A stretch of 63,915 nt of DNA, counting the filler, from Hyphochytrium catenoides (taxonomy: Eukaryota; Protista; Hyphochytriomycota), in NCBI GenBank assembly GCA_900088475.1. It is 11 parts of 11 records of this genome, joined end to end, with 100 filler letters (N's around TTAATTAATTAA, not from the genome) between each part and the next. Parts side by side here need not be neighbours in the genome. Positions count along the whole stretch, not along the records: positions 10,736 to 30,480 come from FLMG01004066.1; 10 more parts are not named here. One strand, written 5' to 3'. Every line of letters begins with the position of its first letter. Within the stretch, counting starts at the first letter, position 1. Under the pieces are notes generated by a model, which worked only from the letters and a program-made list of their open reading frames with translations, did no database searches and was not told the origin of the DNA. Below are positions 15,482 through 27,053 of the stretch, one piece after another. The translations under genes and the position numbers were made by a program.

Positions 15482-16865
15482 TGTCTCCTCTTGGCTTTTG
15501 GTTTCAATGCTTTCTCGGTACTAATGCGCCACTCTGTCTGTACAGGAGGAAAATGATGGCAGAAGAGAGAGTAATACAGGAGCAAGTGAGAGAGAGAGAG
15601 AGAGAGAGAGAATTAGAGAAATAGAGAAGTAGCAAGAGAGAGACCAGAGAGAGGGAGTAGGAGGAGCGGGGAGAAGTAGGAGAGAGGGGAGAGAAAGGGT
15701 TGAAAGATAAAGAGAGGATTAGTACATCCGGTAAGGATAACAGTAAGAACCACAGAGAGACGGAGATACAGAGACCGAGAGAGAGAGAGAGAGAGAATGA
15801 AAGAAAGATAGACTGGCGGTTTCCAGAGACATCATTCAGGGAGGAAGAGTGGACCCAGTGTTCTTGCAGACCGCGAATGGAAACAAAAGAATCTTGGACT
15901 GAGGGAAGGAAAGAAGAGGAGCCAGGGAAGAGAGAGAAGAGAGATGCGGATGTGTAAGAGAGAGAGAGACACACAGAGAAGGAAGGAAGGGAGAAAGACC
16001 TAGAGAGAGGCAGAGCTAGAGAAGAGAAGGAAGAACGGAAGATGTCCTTAGCAGCGCGAAGTCATCGGTAAAAGGATGGCGCTGTGGATCTTTACCTCTT
16101 CTTCTTCTTGTGATCTGGACGGAGAAAGATTTACTGGCGTCGCCCTCGTCATGGGAGAGAAGCGCGAAACAAAAGAGAAGAGAGATGAGAGAGAAAGAGC
16201 AAGCTAAGCAAGGGAGCGAGCGGAGGCGGAGGAGAGAGCTGAGGGAAAGGGAGAAGGCGCGACAGAAGCAACGACATCATCAGAACAAGAGAGTAGAGGA
16301 GAAGAAGATGCGGGAGAGAGAGAGAGAAGGAAGCAGCTGCTGAAAAGGTACCACCCACCGCCGCCGGGATGAGAAAAGAGAGGACGATGGCGAGAGAGAG
16401 AGGAAGCTGTCGAAGATAGAAGACAGGCCAGGCCCTCTTACTTCTCTCTCCCTCTCTTCTTCCCTCCATCACTCATTTATAAGGGCTGTTCTCTAGTCTC
16501 TCTCCCTCTTCAGTACTTTCCTCACACAAAGCTCTAAGGTGTCGCAGCGTAACTAACTGGAAGAAGGAATGAGGGGGAAGAAAGAGAGAGAAAGAGAGAG
16601 AGAACAAAGAAAGAAAAGAAAGATTTTGGGGCCAGGGGCCAGGACAAGGGAAGCTGCCTCAGCACATAAGATGCGCTAAGTCTCTCTTCTCCCTCTCTCC
16701 TCTTTCCCGCGGTTCTTCTTATCATACAGACACTTTTCTCTCTTTCTCTTCTCTTGTTTGCCTGTGTCTCATCATTCTTTCTCTTTCTTCTTCTTCTTCT
16801 CTCTTCCTCGTCATTGCTGTGTGGTCTCTTCTCTCTGCCTCTTTCTGCATTCCCTTCTTTCTGAT

Positions 16866-16899
<34 letters not shown>

Positions 16900-19035
16900 C
16901 TTTGTCTCTCTTCAACCTTATCACTTGATGCTCGTGATTCTCTAGCTGCATCCCGAATATAATAGGGTCTATCTCTAATATGTACTTACCCGGGCGATTA
17001 GATTTGTAATCCTCGTGGTCTCCCTTGTCGTTCTGATCCATTTATGCACACAAGTTTTATATCAATCGCCCTTACGCTCCCCTCTGGTGGCCCTTTTTCT
17101 CTCTTTCATTCTTGTGATGAAGGGGTTCTTCCCTCTCTCTTTCTCTCTCTCTGTCTCTCCCTGTCTCTCTGTCTCTCTCTGTCTCTATCTCTCGCTCTCC
17201 CTTCTTTCTCTCTCCCTCTCTTTAGCCTCTCTCTCACTTTCTCTCGTCCTCTCTTTCCTTTCTCTCTCTCCTCTTTCTGATGACTCTCTTTCTCTCTCCT
17301 CTTCTTTCTCAATACCACTCTCTATCCTATTGTGCTGTCTATCAGTAATATAATGGTGGAGATGTCTCTCATCTTGTCTTTCGGTCTTCTCGCTATTGCT
17401 ATCGTTATTTATTCTTCGTCGTTCTGTTTGCCTCACCACTTCTTTCTGTCTGTTCTAACCCTTGCTCCTCTCAGTTGCCTCATCAATCTTCATAATGAAT
17501 AATCAGGATTGGCTATTTCTCATGAAATTCCGTGTCTTTCTTAGTGGTCCGAATGTTCTCATCTGCGCCGCGCCACCTCGTCTCATAAGCCAGCAGCTAA
17601 AGAAGAATCTGCAGATTCTCAATGTTCCCTCGCATTTTTGCTGATGTGAATACTCTGTACTGAATTCTTTGCTGCTGATTCTCTTGCTCTCCTTTCTTCC
17701 TCAATCTGTCTGGGTCTTTTTCTTCTCTCTTGACTTAGTGTGTCGAGCGCTGCTGTACCTTTCCTCAGCTGCCTCGTCCTCTTCTCTGTCTCGTTGTTGT
17801 TGCTGTTGGTTCTGTACCTCCTTCCTCTCTCTTCTTCTTGTCTCTCTCTCTCTCTCTTCTTAACATTTCTTCCTCGGTTCTTCATCATCCTCTGCGCTCT
17901 GTCTTCTCCTCTTCCTCTAATAACTTTCCTTCATCTCTCTCTTTTTCTCTCTTTCTCTCTCTTTCTTTCTCTCTTTCATTTCCTGTCCCCCATCTCTCTC
18001 TTGCCACTAATTGCCCACCTCATCAATGAAGAATTTGTTGGAGTTGATTTCCAAAATCCCTCTCTCTCTTCCGTAATATTGTCTCTTTCTTCCGGCTCTC
18101 GCCTTCACTCTTTCTCTCTCTTCCTTTTTCTCTCTCTGTCTCACTCTCTTTCGCTCTGGTCGTTGTGTCTCCTCTTTATCCCTAGTTCTCTTCTTTCCTC
18201 TCTCTCTTCTATCTTCTCTCTCTCTCTCTGTCTGTCTACCTCTTTTCTTACTTCTCTTTCTGCGTTCCCTCCTACTATTTATCTCTCCTCCTCTGTCTCT
18301 CTGCATAGAGGACTTTTCTCCTTATTCATCTTCCTCTCTGGTTTTTACTCTGCAAAGGACGGCTCACGACGATTCAGAATATTTTATTGTCACGGAGCCT
18401 TGATGTTCGCGAATCATTTTCAGTTTTCGAAATTGAATCCCGTCGGGAAGAGGGGCTTCGGAATTCAATCTGACTACCGCGAAAGCGTTTAGAAAATAGT
18501 ACTTCAAAAGCTCTATTTCCCCTGAACTATTCTTGATTCTTCTCCTACTATTTGCTCTCTCCGTTTTCAGCTCTCTCTCACATTCTCTCTCTCTCTCTCT
18601 TTCTCTCTCTCCCCTACACATACTACACACACACTCTCTCTCTCTCTCTCTCTCTCTCTTTTCTCTTACTCAGCAGTCCTTTAATCTTTGTCTCTCTCTC
18701 TCTCTGTTTTGACCTCTGTCGCCCTTCTCTTCTCGCGCGTGCTCTTTCTTCTCTTCTTTCTCTTCTCTTCATCATTAACGAACTTACACGGTAACGCACA
18801 CCCTCCAGCCAAGAAACAGAACACCAGCACACACATTGATACTGACAAGCACTTCTTCCTGCACGGGCGCAAGCTTTCGCAGACGAAATCTTACTCTAGA
18901 GGAGAGAGAGAGTGTGCTGTCTCCTCCTCTTCTCCTTTCTTTGCTGTTCGGCTATTAATTTATCCAACTCTGTTGGTGTTTCTCTTTCTGCTTCTCTCAA
19001 TTCTTTCCTTTTCTTGCGCCCTTGTCACTTCACTA

Positions 19036-21269
19036 ATGCCTTTGCCAGGGGTCACTCTTCGCTCTTCTTCCTCTCTCCCTCTCTCCTCATCTCTCCCCCC
19101 GTCGGTGTCTTGTGATCGTCTTGCATCTTCTCTCTCTTTCTCTTCATCTTCTTCAGCTGCTGGCTGGGCTCAGTGGACAGGCGAGAAAGACAAATTTTTT
19201 CTTTTTCTCCTTCTTCATCATTCAGAGAGAGAGAAAGAAAGGGGAATCGAATGCAGAGGCACAGGGGTTAGCTCTGAAGCTTGGGGCAAGATTGTCAGTA
19301 CTTTCAACGGTAGATTTGGAGTCTCTCTCTCGGTAGATCAGCTGAAGAGAAGGTATTATCGGGTAGGTGCAGAAAGGATAGGTATAGAAGGCTGATTGAC
19401 TGTTCTTTTGCTCTTTACGATACTTTCTCCTTCTCCTTTGTCCTTGCGCTCTTTCAGCCAACTTCTGGTCTTTCTGCTTCTTCCATCTACTAATAAGATC
19501 CTCCTTCTCTTTCTTGGGCACTTCTCCTCTCTTTTCCTTTCCTGTACACCTGGCTCCTATCTCTTCCCTCGTTTCATTTTGTCTTCTCTCTCTATCCATC
19601 TAGCTGCGATACCAGTACGAGTCTTTCCTACAGTTGAAATCCCACCCCGACTTCCGCTGGGACAAGGAGAAGAACCTGCCCGTTGCCACAAAGGAGGTCT
19701 GGCAACAGTTCCTCAAGGTAAGAGGCAGCGAGAGCGAGAGCAGAGAGAGGGAGGAAGAGCTCTTAGAAGACAAAAAGAAAAAGGGGGTCGGAGGAGAGAG
19801 AGAAGAATGAGAAGAGACAATCGAGTAAAGCCATTTAGAGAGAGAGAGAGAGATGATGAGAGAGAGAGCGAAAGAGAGAGTGAAAGAGAGGGACTGGGGA
19901 GGGTAAAGGTACGGGTTTTGCCTTGAGACCGGCGAAGCGAACCACGAATGAAAGATGAGGAAAAGAGGGTCAAGGCAGAGAGTGAAGGGCTTCCAGAGAA
20001 CCGTTTTGCTTAAGCATTCTTTCTTTGCTTAGAAAGCGTCTTCTTCATCACAATTCTCGCCCTAAATCTCTTAGAAATGTCCTCGAGAGGCGAAGAAGTT
20101 CCGCAACCAAACTCTGGAAAACGTTGAGCTATTGCATAAACTCTTCGCTAGCGCAGAGGAGGAGAAGAAAGGAGAGAGAATGGCAAGAGAAGAAGAGCAA
20201 GAAAGCGATTCTTCCCCGCGCGTCCTCTCTGCTTCTACTTCCTCATATTTGCCCTCTAACAACTGTTCCTCTAGACTCCAGTAAGTGACGTCCTAATCTG
20301 CCTACTCTTTCGTTCGCCTCCACAATTGTCTCTTCCCATAGTGTCCACGTACTAGTCGTTCCTGAAAGCTGTTTGTCTCTCTCTCTCTCTCTTTCTCTTT
20401 CTCTCCTTCTCGCTCTCCCTTGACTTTGGCCTATCCCTCCTTCATCTCTCTCTCTCTCTCTCTCGTCTTTCTTTTGCTCTCATCTGTCTCTGCTTTTCCC
20501 CTTTCTTAGATGTCCCTCGGCTTATTCCCCTTCGCTCTCTCCTCGATTTCGGTAACCTTCGTCCTCTTTTTTCTCTAGGAAAAAGAGGAAGCAGGGATCA
20601 CGGTGTGAGGAAGGAAAGAGAAGAGGGTCCACCAAGAAGTCCAGAAGAAAGAAAGGAGCTACTCCAGCGACTCAAGAGAGAGAAAGAGATGGAGAGAGAA
20701 GGGAGAGACAGCGACCAGCAGCCGTCTCCCCTTTCCCTTCCTCACATCTCCCTCGTACCTCGCCAGGCACTCTGGCTCACACAACCCTGGAGAAGGCCGT
20801 CTGTATTCTGGAGAAAGAGTATGCAGAAGATGGAAAGGATAAACTCGCACTCGCATTTGATGTAATGCTGGAAGAGAGAAAAGCCTCTCTTTTCTGTGCG
20901 ATGACCAAAGGAGAGACAAGAACTTACTGGCTGGAAAGAGAGAGAGAGAGAAAGAGAAAAGAGAGAGAGAAAGAAGAGTTGGAGCTAGAACAACTACTAA
21001 GGGCCCTTGAAAAAGAGAGAGAAGAGCAAAAGAATGAGACGGACGAACAAGAACAAATCGGTGAAGAATCAGAAGAGAAAGAGAGAGAGACAGAGAGAAC
21101 GGAGGAAAAAGCGGACGACGAAGATAGGAGACGCATCCAAGAAGACGAGGAAGAGAGAGAGACAGAGGAGGAGGGAGGAATGGGGGAAGAAGAAGAAGCA
21201 CAACAACAGAAAGAGAGAGAAGAAGAAGAAGTCTCTTCGGATGCTGTACAGAAGAAGGAGAATGCGTAA
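19036..21269 (+). CDS. Myb/SANT-like DNA-binding protein (Myb_DNA-bind_3 / LIMYB-like), 4 exons, ~445 aa
   Basis: Exons 19036-19362, 19604-19717, 20075-20280 and 20579-21269 (GT-AG, in frame). The spliced protein reads WTGEKD...AWGKIVSTFNGRFGVSLSVDQLKRRYYRLRYQYESFLQLKSHPDFRWDKEKNLPVATKEVWQQFLKKCPREAKKFRNQTLENVELLHKLF, with a C-terminal KAVCILE..AFDVM..KASLFCAM..RTYWLE helix motif. Start codon is tentative. Confidence 0.8.
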
Positions 21270-24251: not shown

Positions 24252-27053
24252 ATGACGTCTAACCCCCTTCACCTTCTCTCTCGGCAGAGAAGGTTACGCT
24301 CCCCCCAATCTTCTCTTTCTCTCTCTCCTTCTCTCTCGTTCTCATCCTGCGGCGGACGACGGCGTCAGAGCATTCTCTATCGGCTCTATCTACAGAGAGC
24401 CTTTGTCGTTGATAAGCATTGGCAACGAAGGAGAGAAATTGCAGCACTGGTCCCTCCTTCTCTCCCCCTCTCTCCTCCATACCATTCTTCATCACTTTCT
24501 CATAGTATTTCCTTTCCCCTTGATGGTCCAGCCCGCAATCCTTCCAGGCGGTGGTCAACTTCCTGGGTAGAGGAGAGAGCAAAGGAGAGAGAGACGGACC
24601 TCTCTCTTTCCGAGAAGACTCTCTCATCTTCTGCTGCTATTCTCTCCGAAGGGGTTCTCTCCTCTCCTCCCCGGTCTCTCCTTTTTTCTTCTCCTTCCCC
24701 GAGGCATATGGAGGAGAGAGAAGAAACGAGGAGAGATAGAGAAAGAAATGGTGGAGAAGACAGAGAGAGAAAGGAAGACAAGGGGAGAGACGAAAGAGTG
24801 CCCATCTCACGAGAACAAGAACAAGAGCCCTCTTCCGAGGTTAGGTATCTGCTGTCGAACTTACGACACGCTCGATCCCCATCCGATGCCGTGAAGAGAG
24901 TTATATTCGGACTCGTAGACCGAAAGTACTACGCTCGGGCGGTTCAGTTCCTTGTTGAAGATCTACCGAAGACAGAGCTCAACATTCAGCCCAGTGAGGC
25001 GATGTTTGCTCTGATTCTACGCGGATTATTGCGATCTGGGGCGCTCGCGGCGGCGGAGGAGCTTCTCCTAGACATCATGCCATCACAGGGCGTCTACCCT
25101 AGTATTAGAGGCTTCACAAGGCTCGTGCAAGCTTATGCAGACCGTGGAATGATGAACCACGCAGAGAAGATTGTCCTTGAAGGTCTGCCTCTTCTCTCTA
25201 TCTCTCCGGACACCATTCTCTTCGCAGCACTCATTAAGGGATATGGCCAATGTGGAGACATTGACGCTGTTAACAGCGTCTTTTATAACAGGCTCCAGGC
25301 AGCAAAGGTTGCTCCGGACATCATTGTGTCTCGCGCTGTGCTGCGTGCCTATCTCAGGAATGGCTTATGGACCAAAGCGGAGAATTTCCTTGTAGAAGAG
25401 ATGGGAAAACACGGCGTAAGAGCCGATGTCACGCTCTATACAGCGCTTCTGGGATGCTTAGGGCAAAGTGGGCATATAAAAAGGATTGAGACTATCCTCT
25501 GGAAGAGAATGCCCGAGGTTGGCATCTCCCCAAATGACATTACCTGCGCTACGGTCATCTCCGCCTTCTGCGCTGCGGGCCGCATAGACAGAGCGCAGGA
25601 CTTCTTGCTGAAGGACATGGAAAAGCTTCACATCATTCCAAATGAGTTCCATTTTGCCACTGTTATGAGCGCGTACGCCGTGGCCGGAGATGTCCATACG
25701 GTTGAGAGATTGTTCTGGGAAATCATGCCGAAGCAGAGGGTGCCGCGAGACAGAGTGGTCTGTGCCATTCTTCTAAAAGCATACTGCAGGACGCAGAATA
25801 TCTCACGCGCAGAAGAGTTCCTAGCAGAGGATATGAGGATGCTTAACGTCCGCCCACATGTTGACCACTACCGTCCGCTCATTGCCGCTTATACCGCAAT
25901 GGGAGAGCAATCACGTGCACACCATACGCTCCATACGAGGATGGTGGCTGCGGGCGTTAAGCCAGATGAAGATCTTATCTTTCACATGCTGAGGGCCTAC
26001 TGGCAATGGGGAGCCGCGGACGAGGCGGAGCGGCTAGTCACAGTGAAGCTTCCTGAATGGGGCGTCCCCGTGACGAATCGGATGTTCCGCGTGTTACTAT
26101 GGATCTACGCTGCGCAACAGGATCATGCTAACTTCGACCGCATTCTTTATGAAAGGATGCCCGCAGCGAAGGTGATGCCTGACAGTGAAGACTGTCGGTT
26201 TGTGCTCACATGCTTTGCGCATCAGGAGCGTCCAGATAGTGCGGAAAAGTTTGTGCAGGAGGTGATGAGGCAGCAATTCAATATCCATCCCGATCCGCGC
26301 CACTTGTCGGCACTCATCGAGGCATACGCACGAACCGATTCCCCAGAGGCCATGGAAGAGGTCTTCACAAAGACGATGCCGCAAATGGGCGTGATGCCCA
26401 ACTCTGAAGCTTGTCTGGCGATGCTGAATGGTTATTGCCTACAACGGATCTCAGAAAGAGCCGAGAGGTTCATTCTTGAGATCATGCCACGTCTGCATAT
26501 CAAGCCAGAGACTGCACACTTCAATGTCCTCATGGAAATGTATGGCAAGATGGGGAGCGTGACCGAAGCAGACATGATTTTCTCGGACAGACTCCCTCGC
26601 GCCGGTCTCTCCCCTGATCTGGAGACTTGTTATTGGATGGTACGCGCCTACGCTGAGATCCAGGACCACAGGCGAGCAGAGAAGTTCTTCGAGTATGAGA
26701 TGCCAAAAATGGGCCTTCGACCGAGAGAGAGACACTTCTCAGTCCTCATAGACTCCTATATCTTAGCAGGAAATCTTGATATGGCGGAAGAGGTTTTCTA
26801 TGGAAGACTGATCGAGCAGAGACGGGCAGTGCCCGGAATCTCTTCTTGTGCAGCGTTATTGGCTGGATATCTGAAGCTTGGAAGAGAAGACAAAGCCGAT
26901 AACTTCTTGAATGTGGAGGTTGTGAGGCTGGGCTTGGACCCATATGAGTTGGAAGCAAGCACTGAGCTGAAGTGGAGGAGAAGAAGAGACATGAGATTGG
27001 AAGAAAGGCAGAGAGAAATGGAAGAAGAAAGCAAGTGGGAGGTATGGTGGTAA
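24252..27053 (+). CDS. Pentatricopeptide-repeat-like protein (933 aa, 18 tandem 36/37-aa repeats), probably organelle-targeted
   Basis: Intronless ORF. Repeats follow the PPR pattern (I/V)xP(D/N)xxx(F/Y/C)xxLxxAYxxxGxxxxAxx(F/L)xxxxM. The N-terminus is Arg/Ser-rich and acid-poor, like a mitochondrial presequence. No E/DYW or SMR extension seen. Confidence 0.92.
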   Translation: MTSNPLHLLSRQRRLRSPQSSLSLSPSLSFSSCGGRRRQSILYRLYLQRAFVVDKHWQRRREIAALVPPSLPLSPPYHSSSLSHSISFPLDGPARNPSRRWSTSWVEERAKERETDLSLSEKTLSSSAAILSEGVLSSPPRSLLFSSPSPRHMEEREETRRDRERNGGEDRERKEDKGRDERVPISREQEQEPSSEVRYLLSNLRHARSPSDAVKRVIFGLVDRKYYARAVQFLVEDLPKTELNIQPSEAMFALILRGLLRSGALAAAEELLLDIMPSQGVYPSIRGFTRLVQAYADRGMMNHAEKIVLEGLPLLSISPDTILFAALIKGYGQCGDIDAVNSVFYNRLQAAKVAPDIIVSRAVLRAYLRNGLWTKAENFLVEEMGKHGVRADVTLYTALLGCLGQSGHIKRIETILWKRMPEVGISPNDITCATVISAFCAAGRIDRAQDFLLKDMEKLHIIPNEFHFATVMSAYAVAGDVHTVERLFWEIMPKQRVPRDRVVCAILLKAYCRTQNISRAEEFLAEDMRMLNVRPHVDHYRPLIAAYTAMGEQSRAHHTLHTRMVAAGVKPDEDLIFHMLRAYWQWGAADEAERLVTVKLPEWGVPVTNRMFRVLLWIYAAQQDHANFDRILYERMPAAKVMPDSEDCRFVLTCFAHQERPDSAEKFVQEVMRQQFNIHPDPRHLSALIEAYARTDSPEAMEEVFTKTMPQMGVMPNSEACLAMLNGYCLQRISERAERFILEIMPRLHIKPETAHFNVLMEMYGKMGSVTEADMIFSDRLPRAGLSPDLETCYWMVRAYAEIQDHRRAEKFFEYEMPKMGLRPRERHFSVLIDSYILAGNLDMAEEVFYGRLIEQRRAVPGISSCAALLAGYLKLGREDKADNFLNVEVVRLGLDPYELEASTELKWRRRRDMRLEERQREMEEESKWEVWW

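What the first reader, a model, noticed from the sequence alone, without database searches (positions are those of the whole stretch)
24984..26933. PPR-like array made of 36-aa repeats in a strict two-type alternation (72-aa dyad)
Seen: 650 aa divide exactly into 18 repeats, sixteen of 36 aa and two of 37 aa, none of 35. The extra residue sits in helix B (A-x7-M here, A-x6-M in the P-type consensus). Even repeats mostly have Cys at the usual Tyr/Phe position (6, 8, 12, 14, 16, 18) and A(E/Q/D)xF. Odd repeats have (H/L/M)(F/Y/L) there and R(M/L) at the end of helix B (3, 5, 9, 11, 15, 17). The base-reading position 5 reads A,T,A,R,T,A,A,A,R,F,R,R,S,L,N,Y,S,A, mostly outside the N/T/S code. Established: P-class PPRs are 35 aa and PLS arrays cycle P-L-S. 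Inference: a distinct PPR subclass grown by dyad duplication, possibly with altered superhelical pitch, a different RNA code or a scaffold role in mitochondrial RNA metabolism.
Basis: partly seen in the sequence, partly recalled or inferred. Interest (0 to 1): 0.75.

Follow-up and report, generated by a model that had tools for sequence, protein, structure and literature searches.

The report
PPR protein built of alternating 36-residue repeats
This gene encodes a helical-repeat RNA-binding (PPR) protein whose 36-residue repeats alternate strictly between two types, and it belongs to a gene family found so far only in this water-mould-like protist, which grew by copying the two-repeat unit; it is a new variant of a well-known protein class, not a new class.

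Summary
ORF 24252-27053 (+) encodes a 933-aa PPR protein (Pfam PPR_3 6.7e-36; TIGR00756 2.4e-50). Residues 245-894 form 18 repeats: sixteen of 36 aa and two of 37.

The odd/even alternation is real (permutation z = 6.5). HMMs built only from paralogues label repeats 3-18 correctly, 16 of 16.

The genome is almost certainly Hyphochytrium catenoides, a plastid-less stramenopile. It holds at least 18 further ORFs on 13 contigs with the same A/B alternation: 227 of 228 adjacent repeats alternate. Several are 216-bp DNA tandem arrays, so the two-repeat unit (dyad) is the unit of duplication.

Both types are P-type PPR motifs with one extra residue late in helix B. AlphaFold gives 36 helices (pLDDT 92), and the best structural matches are PPR10 and designer PPRs.

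A dyad-profile HMMER search of 1.84 billion proteins found no other 36+36 member. Other PPR super-repeats do exist there (PLS triplets; 70-, 72-, 74- and 81-aa units).

In the expanded paralogues, type A carries canonical code pairs and type B does not. The window protein is mostly non-canonical at both.

The most likely function is mitochondrial RNA binding. That function, and any change in superhelical pitch, remain untested.

The parts
24252..27053 (+). Whole ORF, 933 codons plus stop: PPR protein with no catalytic C-terminal domain.
   Evidence: ORF. Pfam PPR_3 6.7e-36, PPR_2 2.9e-35, PPR_long 1.5e-25, TIGR00756 2.4e-50; no E, DYW, SMR or RAP hit; designer PPR dPPR-U10 8.5e-46, PPR10 about 1e-39.
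24252..24431 (+). Residues 1-60: basic, Ser/Thr-rich N-terminus, possibly a mitochondrial presequence (inference).
   Evidence: 12 K+R against 1 D+E, and 13 S+T. No targeting predictor was available.
24432..24869 (+). Residues 61-206: low-complexity stretch (Ser/Leu/Pro runs, then Arg/Glu/Asp runs). Its coding status and the true start codon are uncertain.
   Evidence: GC at codon positions 1/2/3 is 0.56/0.57/0.44 (residues 1-100) and 0.54/0.50/0.48 (101-206), against 0.59/0.40/0.58 in the repeat region. TC-rich simple repeats at 24312-24343.
24870..24983 (+).
   Evidence: a 19th repeat labelled B, 38 aa before R01; only weak partial matches to the end of the dyad profile, at different places in this segment (negative scores).
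24984..25199 (+). Dyad 1 (R01 + R02), the least typical pair.
   Evidence: 27.8 bits to the paralogue-only dyad profile; the type labels of R01 and R02 are ambiguous.
25200..25415 (+). Dyad 2 (R03 type A + R04 type B).
   Evidence: 61.4 bits, in register; both labels as expected.
25416..25631 (+). Dyad 3 (R05 A + R06 B).
   Evidence: 66.3 bits.
25632..25847 (+). Dyad 4 (R07 A + R08 B).
   Evidence: 55.3 bits.
25848..26063 (+). Dyad 5 (R09 A + R10 B).
   Evidence: 36.3 bits.
26064..26282 (+). Dyad 6 (R11 A + R12 B); R12 has 37 residues.
   Evidence: 39.5 bits; spacing of 37 after R12.
26283..26498 (+). Dyad 7 (R13 A + R14 B).
   Evidence: 53.7 bits.
26499..26714 (+). Dyad 8 (R15 A + R16 B).
   Evidence: 56.1 bits.
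26715..26933 (+). Dyad 9 (R17 A + R18 B); R17 has 37 residues.
   Evidence: 36.5 bits; spacing of 37 after R17.
26934..27050 (+). Residues 895-933: short charged C-terminal tail with no recognised domain.
   Evidence: 9 K+R, 12 D+E; no Pfam hit there.

Best explanation
The gene encodes a P-class-derived pentatricopeptide repeat (PPR) protein of Hyphochytrium catenoides, or a near-identical assembly. Its array is built from a 72-residue super-repeat, which consists of two 36-residue helix-hairpin motifs.

- Type A shows H-F in helix A, a G-Y-G turn, and an aromatic residue followed by R-M-P late in helix B.
- Type B shows Cys in place of the usual aromatic residue, K-A-Y, and A-E-x-F-L in helix B.
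- Each type is an ordinary P motif with one extra residue late in helix B.

The protein belongs to a family found so far only in this genome. Ten or more genes of that family share an N-terminal leader and are tandem arrays of near-identical 216-bp dyads. The window gene and one on contig C2495 are old, diverged members in which only the type-specific framework residues survive.

Shown: PPR identity, the 36-aa period, the A/B alternation, the family, growth by dyad duplication, and the solenoid fold.

Inferred:
- The array binds single-stranded RNA along its inner groove in the mitochondrion, one nucleotide per repeat.
- A and B must alternate because their helix-B and helix-A side chains pack against each other in a complementary way.
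- In the expanded paralogues type A reads any of the four bases by the canonical 5/35 code, while type B is a low-specificity, purine-leaning position.
- The window copy has few canonical code pairs. It therefore more likely acts as a low-specificity RNA stabiliser, a translation factor or a ribosome-associated factor than as a programmable reader.
For: PPR identity:
- Searches give the family matches.
- hhalign of types A and B against a 35-aa P profile gives probabilities of 97.5% and 97.45%, each with a single one-residue insertion.
- The AlphaFold2 model has mean pLDDT 92 and 36 helices in a regular pattern of roughly 13-14 helix A, 2-3 turn, 14 helix B and 6 loop residues.
- The top Foldseek hits are PPR10 and designer PPRs, with E-values of 1e-15 to 1e-10.

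Alternation in the window protein. In a maximum-likelihood tree, one branch (SH-aLRT 88) holds 26 type-A repeats and nothing else. The A/B labels need 7 changes on the tree, against about 25 when shuffled (0 of 500 shuffles as low).

Family:
- The own-genome search gives 66 matches.
- HMMs trained only on the window's odd and even repeats label 254 repeats in 18 ORFs on 13 other contigs. There, 227 of 228 adjacent repeats alternate and 226 of 236 spacings are exactly 36.
- A conserved leader of about 105 aa occurs at 10 places.

Dyad duplication: a 216-bp tandem array of 9.6 copies with 89% matches in L021, and no such repeat in the window gene; lag-72 autocorrelation is far above lag-36.

Restriction to this genome:
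- The paralogue-only dyad profile scores the window protein at 445.8 bits in 9 in-register dyads.
- The same profile gives the best database protein 280 bits, with single stretches of at most 44 bits.
- The searched profile A1, which also includes the window's dyads, gives that protein 329 bits.
- 124 of the 150 top database hits have a 35-aa period, and none has a run of 36-aa spacings.

Code: paralogue type A carries ND 34, TN 25, TD 21 and NN 19; type B carries ST 32, SS 14 and SN 9. Ser, Thr, Ala, Cys or Gly at position 5 favours purines (PMC6468296).

Organism and compartment:
- The cytosolic HSP70 is closest to oomycete HSP70s, at 84-89% identity.
- The assembly has 4759 records, matching 4758 scaffolds plus one mitochondrial genome.
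- The paper reports no plastid genome (PMC5795050).
- Contig C4759 is a 48,127-bp, 30.5% GC mitochondrial DNA carrying cox1.
Against: - No direct evidence exists for expression, for the start codon, for import into mitochondria or for RNA binding.
- The first 206 codons have a codon-position composition unlike the repeat region, so the presequence-like N-terminus may not be translated.
- The window protein has only about 4 canonical code pairs in 19 repeats.
- A code-based scan of the mitochondrial genome found no site better than column-shuffled controls, for the paralogues or for the window protein.
- Per-column pN/pS at the most variable sites is only about 1.0-1.3, with saturated pS (0.44), so diversifying selection is not shown.
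- The complementary-packing idea was not tested on coordinates.
- Records of the genome itself appear to be hidden from the protein databases, and hyphochytrids are barely sampled. 'Only in this genome' therefore means 'not in any other sampled lineage'.
Confidence: 0.7

Rival explanations
1. This is an ordinary P-class PPR protein. On this view the A/B pattern is only a leftover of past two-repeat duplications and carries no structural or functional constraint.
For: - Two-repeat and three-repeat duplication units are common in database PPRs, for example a 70-aa unit in a Sphagnum cluster.
- In the tree, type B mixes with canonical 35-aa repeats of the same genome.
Against: - Same-type repeats in the window gene share only about 26% identity, yet they keep their type-specific residues.
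- The same A/B signatures are shared with paralogues that are only 30-39% identical and, by 12 of 13 labels, with the C2495 gene.
- 227 of 228 neighbouring repeats alternate across 18 ORFs, and deletions of a single repeat are essentially never seen.
- All repeats keep 36 aa rather than drifting back to 35.
Confidence: 0.12
2. The window protein is mainly a protein scaffold or a mitoribosome or complex subunit, like rPPR/mS39-type or LRPPRC-type PPRs. On this view it is not a sequence-specific RNA reader.
For: - Position-5/35 pairs are mostly non-canonical: AS, AD, RD, FT, LE, YR and others.
- Plant mitoribosomal PPRs (mL102, mS77, mS80) and LRPPRC appear among the sequence and fold matches.
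- There is no catalytic domain.
Against: - The best matches are RNA-binding P-class proteins: designer PPRs and PPR10.
- No orthology to any ribosomal PPR was found.
- The paralogues do carry canonical codes.
Confidence: 0.2
3. The expanded subfamily, and by extension this gene, behaves like plant Rf-like PPRs. These are fast-evolving, clustered genes locked in a conflict with mitochondrial transcripts or selfish mitochondrial elements.
For: - Genes lie in same-strand clusters on C2965, C2767 and C1634, and many arrays sit at contig ends.
- Among the most variable columns are A4 (the residue that serves as position 35 of type B) and B9 (position 5 of type B). Type A switches between N and T at its position 5.
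Against: - pN/pS does not clearly exceed 1, and other non-code columns (B26, A18) are just as variable.
- No predicted mitochondrial target was found.
- The window gene itself is single-copy and old, with no DNA repeat.
Confidence: 0.15
4. The ORF is a non-functional relic or is not expressed as annotated here. It could be a pseudogene or part of a spliced gene with a different N-terminus.
For: The N-terminal 206 codons look compositionally non-coding. No transcript data were available.
Against: - The frame stays open for 933 codons.
- Framework residues are conserved in all 18 repeats.
- The fold is predicted with confidence.
Confidence: 0.05

Closest known systems
P-class PPR proteins (maize PPR10; consensus designer dPPR/cPPR)
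   Same: - Both are helix-hairpin repeats that form a solenoid.
- They are the strongest sequence matches (8.5e-46 to dPPR-U10) and fold matches.
- Neither has a C-terminal E/DYW domain.
- The paralogues' type-A repeats use the same 5/35 code pairs.
   Different: - Every motif here has 36 residues rather than 35, with one residue added late in helix B.
- Two motif types alternate in a fixed order.
- The window copy lacks canonical code pairs at most repeats.
PLS-class PPR proteins (P1-L1-S1 / P2-L2-S2 triplets)
   Same: - Both show a higher-order repeat of different motif types in fixed order.
- L motifs are 35-36 aa and differ from P motifs mainly in the second helix (PMC13041630).
- One motif type is weak in base reading: L there, type B here.
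   Different: - The period here is 72 (36+36), not about 101-102 (35+35/36+31); such triplets are visible in database hits.
- There is no 31-aa S motif and no E or DYW domain.
- The organism is a heterotrophic stramenopile, not a land plant.
Restorer-of-fertility-like (RFL) P-class PPR clusters of flowering plants
   Same: The genes are clustered, recently duplicated and mitochondrial-type PPRs that vary at specificity positions.
   Different: - Expansion here is mostly inside genes, by tandem copying of a 216-bp dyad.
- Positive selection is not demonstrated.
- No link to a mitochondrial target is known.
Other organellar helical-repeat RNA binders with longer units: HPR (37 aa, alveolates) and OPR (38 aa, green algae)
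   Same: Both are alpha-solenoid repeat proteins of organelle RNA metabolism whose unit is slightly longer than 35 aa.
   Different: The sequence here is clearly PPR by Pfam, TIGRFAM and PDB matches. The period is 36, not 37 or 38, and no RAP domain is present.
Undescribed two-type PPR arrays seen among the database hits
   Same: They show fixed alternation of two PPR-like motif types. Examples are P0257 (72-aa unit, 35+37), the diatom Grammatophora protein P0265 (74), P0367 (81) and a Sphagnum cluster represented by P0294 (70).
   Different: The motif lengths and signatures differ. None scores as a member of this family: single stretches reach at most about 45 bits, against 28-66 for the window protein and more than 100 for the paralogues.

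Membership tests
PPR superfamily | Significant match to curated PPR profiles. | tested here: met
   Pfam PPR_3, PPR_2, PPR, PPR_1 and PPR_long all score above their cut-offs, and TIGR00756 scores 165.7 bits against a cut-off of 20.
PPR superfamily | Tandem helix-turn-helix motifs that form an alpha-solenoid. | tested here: met
   The AlphaFold2 model has pLDDT 92 and 36 regular helices. The top Foldseek matches are PPR10 and designer PPRs.
PPR superfamily | Motif length of 35 residues (P motif). | tested here: not met
   The period is 36. One residue is inserted late in helix B relative to a 35-aa profile.
PPR superfamily | Canonical specificity residues at positions 5 and 35 (N/T/S with D/N/S). 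| tested here: inconclusive
   In the window protein about 4 of 19 pairs are canonical (TD, TN, SN, ND). In the paralogues type A is nearly all canonical and type B is mostly ST or SS.
PPR superfamily | Organellar localisation and binding of single-stranded RNA. | not testable with these tools
   Only indirect evidence exists: a basic N-terminus, no plastid genome in the organism, and no predicted mitochondrial DNA target.
P class | Array made of a single motif type, with no E/DYW extension. | tested here: not met
   There is no E/DYW domain, but two motif types alternate in fixed order.
PLS class | P-L-S triplets (35, 35-36 and 31-32 aa), usually followed by E/DYW. | tested here: not met
   Spacing is a uniform 36 aa with a super-period of 72, and no 31-aa motif is present. 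No E/DYW hit was found. PLS hits in the database show a period of 101-102 instead.
PLS class | Assignment of motifs by the P1/P2/L1/L2/S1/S2/SS HMMs of Cheng et al. 2016. | not tested
   Those motif HMMs are not in any library offered here.
Rf-like PPR | Genomic clusters with diversifying selection at code positions. | tested here: inconclusive
   Clusters are present. The top column pN/pS values are only 1.0-1.3 with saturated pS, and they are not confined to code sites.
36+36 dyad PPR family of this genome | In-register, full-length matches to the 72-position dyad profile built without the window protein. | tested here: met
   The window protein scores 445.8 bits with 9 consecutive dyads of 28-66 bits. 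The best of the top 150 database hits scores 280 bits, in fragments of at most 44 bits.

The most novel reading that the evidence does not exclude
The 36+36 dyad may be a functional unit of a new PPR sub-class. In it, type-A motifs read bases with the canonical code, while type-B motifs act as obligatory low-specificity, purine-leaning struts whose side chains pack in a complementary way with type A. The array would then recognise RNA with a two-nucleotide rhythm. The family would have expanded in hyphochytrids by dyad slippage, as an Rf-like response to the mitochondrial genome.
Probability: 0.25. Interest if true: 0.7.

Novelty: new variant of a known kind. Interest (0 to 1): 0.5.

Why it matters
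PPR proteins are the main programmable RNA readers of organelles, and they are being engineered as RNA tools. Their recognised architectures are the uniform 35-aa P class and the plant P-L-S triplet class.

A family with a fixed A/B order and a longer helix B, in a heterotrophic stramenopile, would add a third natural architecture. Its near-identical natural dyads look like ready-made consensus scaffolds. It would also show that lineage-specific PPR expansion by copying repeats within genes is not confined to plants.

If type B proves to be a spacer, it would give a natural example of how non-reading motifs are tolerated in an RNA-binding solenoid. For the window gene alone the gain is modest: it is one diverged member with unknown targets.

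Tried and rejected
1. Exact look-up of the window protein in public assemblies found nothing on record; records of the genome itself appear to be withheld.

2. Organism guesses of a coccidian or other alveolate were dropped. There is no SAG-family hit (the control genomes cannot ring for this family) and no TTTAGGG telomere array. HSP70 then pointed to a relative of the oomycetes.

3. Two word-index searches, with the window protein and with a paralogue, returned only generic 35-aa PPRs at 20-31% identity. Both protein-atlas look-ups gave generic PPR clusters and no useful taxon.

4. I scanned both strands of the 48-kb mitochondrial genome with position weight matrices derived from the 5/35 code. 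The matrices covered 15 paralogue arrays and the window protein. No best site exceeded column-shuffled matrices (z from -1.5 to +1.2). The code table I used came from general knowledge of the published code, so it is approximate.

5. The canonical 35-aa PPR on C3753 (L031) was also labelled B-A-B-A by the HMMs. The score margins are small and no pattern is visible by eye, so I treat this as chance.

6. Superhelical pitch could not be measured, because model coordinates are not exposed to scripts. Global TM-scores of only 0.4-0.5 to PPR10 say nothing reliable about pitch in long solenoids.

7. Column-wise pN/pS gave no clear sign of positive selection.

8. Pfam scans of ten neighbouring ORFs in the window gave one weak Myb/SANT-like hit and nothing related to the PPR gene.
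Full report
**What is there**

The piece holds one long ORF, 24252-27053 on the + strand, of 933 codons. It matches every Pfam PPR model above threshold (PPR_3 6.7e-36, PPR_2 2.9e-35, PPR_long 1.5e-25) and TIGR00756 at 2.4e-50. No E, DYW, SMR or RAP domain is present. Against PDB sequences the best matches are consensus designer P-class proteins (dPPR-U10, 8.5e-46) and maize PPR10 (about 1e-39).

**Checking the observation**

- Period. Autocorrelation of substitution scores shows a single sharp period of 36. Values are +0.54 at lag 36, +0.93 at 72, +0.64 at 108 and +0.93 at 144. Every other lag lies between about -0.8 and -1.3.
- Repeat lengths. Repeat starts projected from a repeat HMM are spaced 36 x11, 37, 36 x4, 37.
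- Extra repeat. One more degenerate type-B repeat lies just upstream, at residues 207-244.
- Alternation. In an alignment of the 18 repeats, same-parity pairs score 37.1 on average and opposite-parity pairs 20.8. This is z = 6.5 against 20,000 label permutations, of which one was as high. Identities are 25.9% against 20.2%, and 15 of 18 nearest neighbours share parity.
- Residues.
- Insertion. Profile-profile alignment of each type to a 35-aa P-motif profile, built from 395 strictly 35-spaced repeats of database PPRs, is end to end. It shows one inserted residue late in helix B (probability 97.5% for type A and 97.45% for type B).

**The organism**

The assembly G000 has 61.0 Mb in 4759 contigs and is a eukaryote with introns. 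A cytosolic HSP70 on another contig is most similar to oomycete HSP70s, at 84-89% identity, followed by other stramenopiles.

The Hyphochytrium catenoides paper reports 4758 scaffolds of 1 kb or more plus one mitochondrial record. [quoted passage not shown] The last contig, C4759, is a 48,127-bp, 30.5% GC molecule carrying cox1. I therefore take the genome to be H. catenoides.

That paper does not mention pentatricopeptide proteins.

**The family**

A six-frame search of the genome with the repeat region gave 66 matches. Many are 32-39% identical and lie in long open frames, several per contig.

These paralogues have an overwhelming 72-aa period. Autocorrelation is 2.0-4.6 at lag 72 against 0.3-1.1 at lag 36 in nine of the eleven paralogue frames. 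The other two, on C58 and one on C2965, are weaker at 1.3-1.5. Each unit is one type-A motif plus one type-B motif.

Two independent cross-checks tie the window protein to this family:

- HMMs built only from the window's odd and even repeats label 254 repeats in 18 ORFs on 13 other contigs. Of 228 adjacent pairs spaced 36-37 aa, 227 alternate, and 226 of 236 spacings are exactly 36.
- HMMs built only from 112 paralogue dyads label window repeats 3-18 correctly, 16 of 16. A paralogue-only dyad profile aligns nine consecutive in-register dyads in the window protein, for 445.8 bits.

Further points on the family:

- In a tree of 75 repeats, one branch (SH-aLRT 88) holds 26 type-A repeats and no others. 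Type B mixes with canonical 35-aa repeats of the same genome. The A/B labels need 7 changes, against about 25 when shuffled. Resolution is poor with 36 columns.
- At the DNA level, the paralogue on C4408 is a 216-bp tandem array of 9.6 copies with 89% matches. The window gene has no DNA repeat. The dyad is therefore the unit of duplication, and the window gene is an old copy.
- A conserved R/S/T-rich leader of about 105 aa occurs at 10 places on 9 contigs. This sets a minimum of ten genes in the expanded subfamily. The window gene lacks that leader.
- Many arrays end at contig ends, so copy numbers are lower bounds.
- A further diverged 36-aa member lies on C2495, with 12 of 13 labels alternating.
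- The genome also has ordinary 35-aa PPRs, for example on C3753.

**Is it found elsewhere?**

Word-index searches with the window protein and with a paralogue returned only generic PPRs at 20-31% identity. These came from plants, Symbiodinium, Polarella and unnamed transcripts.

The claim rests on absence of relatives, so I ran the exhaustive HMMER search with a 72-position dyad profile (A1) against 1.84 billion representatives.

- It found 27,348 proteins at E <= 1e-3. The best scores 329 bits, spread over 16 overlapping partial stretches of at most 45 bits.
- The same profile gives 1257 bits to a paralogue and 689 bits to the window protein.
- Of the 150 top hits, 124 have a 35-aa period. 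None has more than four 36-aa spacings, and type labels alternate at chance level (mean 0.48).

Two caveats apply. Records of the genome itself seem to be withheld from these databases, and other hyphochytrids are hardly sampled.

Higher-order repeats as such are not unique:

- PLS triplets show a period of 101-102.
- P0257 has a 72-aa unit of 35+37.
- Diatom-type proteins have 74- and 81-aa two-type units (P0265 from Grammatophora, and P0367).
- A Sphagnum cluster has a 70-aa unit.

One unnamed environmental eukaryote protein, P0272, has 36-aa repeats. It aligns to the window protein almost without gaps over many repeats, at 23% identity. The one-residue-longer motif may therefore be older than the dyad family.

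**Structure**

I gave AlphaFold2 an alignment of eleven paralogue arrays. The model has mean pLDDT 92 and pTM 0.67. It shows 36 helices in a regular pattern of roughly 13-14 (helix A), 2-3 (turn), 14 (helix B) and 6 (loop) residues. Foldseek ranks PPR10, PEP-associated and mitoribosomal PPRs and designer PPRs first.

Pitch could not be measured here. A 2026 review also warns that AlphaFold does not predict the superhelical state of PPRs well (PMC13041630).

**How it probably works**

- In the expanded paralogues, type A carries the canonical 5/35 pairs ND, TN, TD and NN, which together cover all four bases.
- Type B carries mostly ST, SS, SN and AT.
- Ser, Thr, Ala, Cys or Gly at position 5 favours purines (PMC6468296).
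- The most variable columns include the residue that serves as position 35 of type B and position 5 of type B. They also include non-code columns, and pN/pS there is only about 1.0-1.3 with saturated pS.
- The window protein has only about four canonical pairs.
- A code-based scan of the mitochondrial genome gave nothing above shuffled controls.
- The first 60 residues are strongly basic: 12 K+R against 1 D+E. However, the first 206 codons differ in codon-position composition from the repeats, so the start is uncertain.

My best reading is a mitochondrial single-stranded-RNA-binding solenoid in which A and B must alternate for packing. In the paralogues, A is the reading motif and B a low-specificity motif. 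The window copy is a low-specificity stabiliser, translation factor or complex-associated factor. Only the architecture is shown; the function is inferred.

**Verdict**

It is a new variant of a known kind: P-class-derived, 36+36, in fixed A/B order, and not seen in any other sampled lineage. It is not a new class, and other two-type PPR arrays exist undescribed in databases. The ideas about altered pitch and a different code remain untested.

Noticed in passing
window 18688-19392 (+): This ORF has a weak Myb/SANT-like DNA-binding domain (PF12776, E = 7.8e-6), a domain often linked to Harbinger/PIF-type transposon genes. The other nine ORFs tested in the piece had no Pfam hit.
   Followed up: no
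window 16736-18735: There is strong strand asymmetry here: GC skew of -0.41 to -0.50 and AT skew of about -0.55. This is a C/T-rich low-complexity stretch on the + strand.
   Followed up: no
G000:C1785:9748-11091 and G000:C4759:43188-44531: cox1 is present with identical scores on the mitochondrial contig and on a second scaffold. Either a mitochondrial fragment is duplicated among the nuclear scaffolds or there is a recent nuclear copy.
   Followed up: no
L017 (G000:C2965:2807-6622) and L019 (G000:C1634): Long paralogue ORFs consist of two or three A/B arrays joined in frame. On C2965 the linkers are 57-59 aa and each new array restarts with a type-A repeat (spacings of 93 and 95 aa). On C1634 there is a shorter break of 57 aa. 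The proteins look multi-module, but these could be fused gene copies.
   Followed up: partly
L012 (G000:C2495:7762-9633): This is a second diverged PPR gene with 36-37-aa repeats. 12 of 13 labels alternate between A-like and B-like motifs, and it is 26% identical to the window protein.
   Followed up: partly
P0272; loci L037-L039 (metagenome contigs of 13-15 kb): An unnamed environmental eukaryote with compact, apparently intron-poor genes encodes a 689-aa PPR with 36-aa repeats. It carries the same M-P-x-x-G end of helix B and is 23% identical to the window protein. Its organism was not identified.
   Followed up: partly
P0257, P0265, P0367, P0294 (database proteins): Other PPR proteins have fixed two-type super-repeats of 72 (35+37), 74, 81 and 70 aa. 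P0265 is from the diatom Grammatophora, and the P0294 cluster includes Sphagnum. The literature searches made here turned up no description of such dyad arrays.
   Followed up: partly
P0247 (Parashewanella curva, RLV58935.1): A gammaproteobacterial protein of 1283 aa matches the PPR dyad profile at 262 bits and has a strong 85-aa super-repeat. It is a bacterial PPR-like repeat protein.
   Followed up: no
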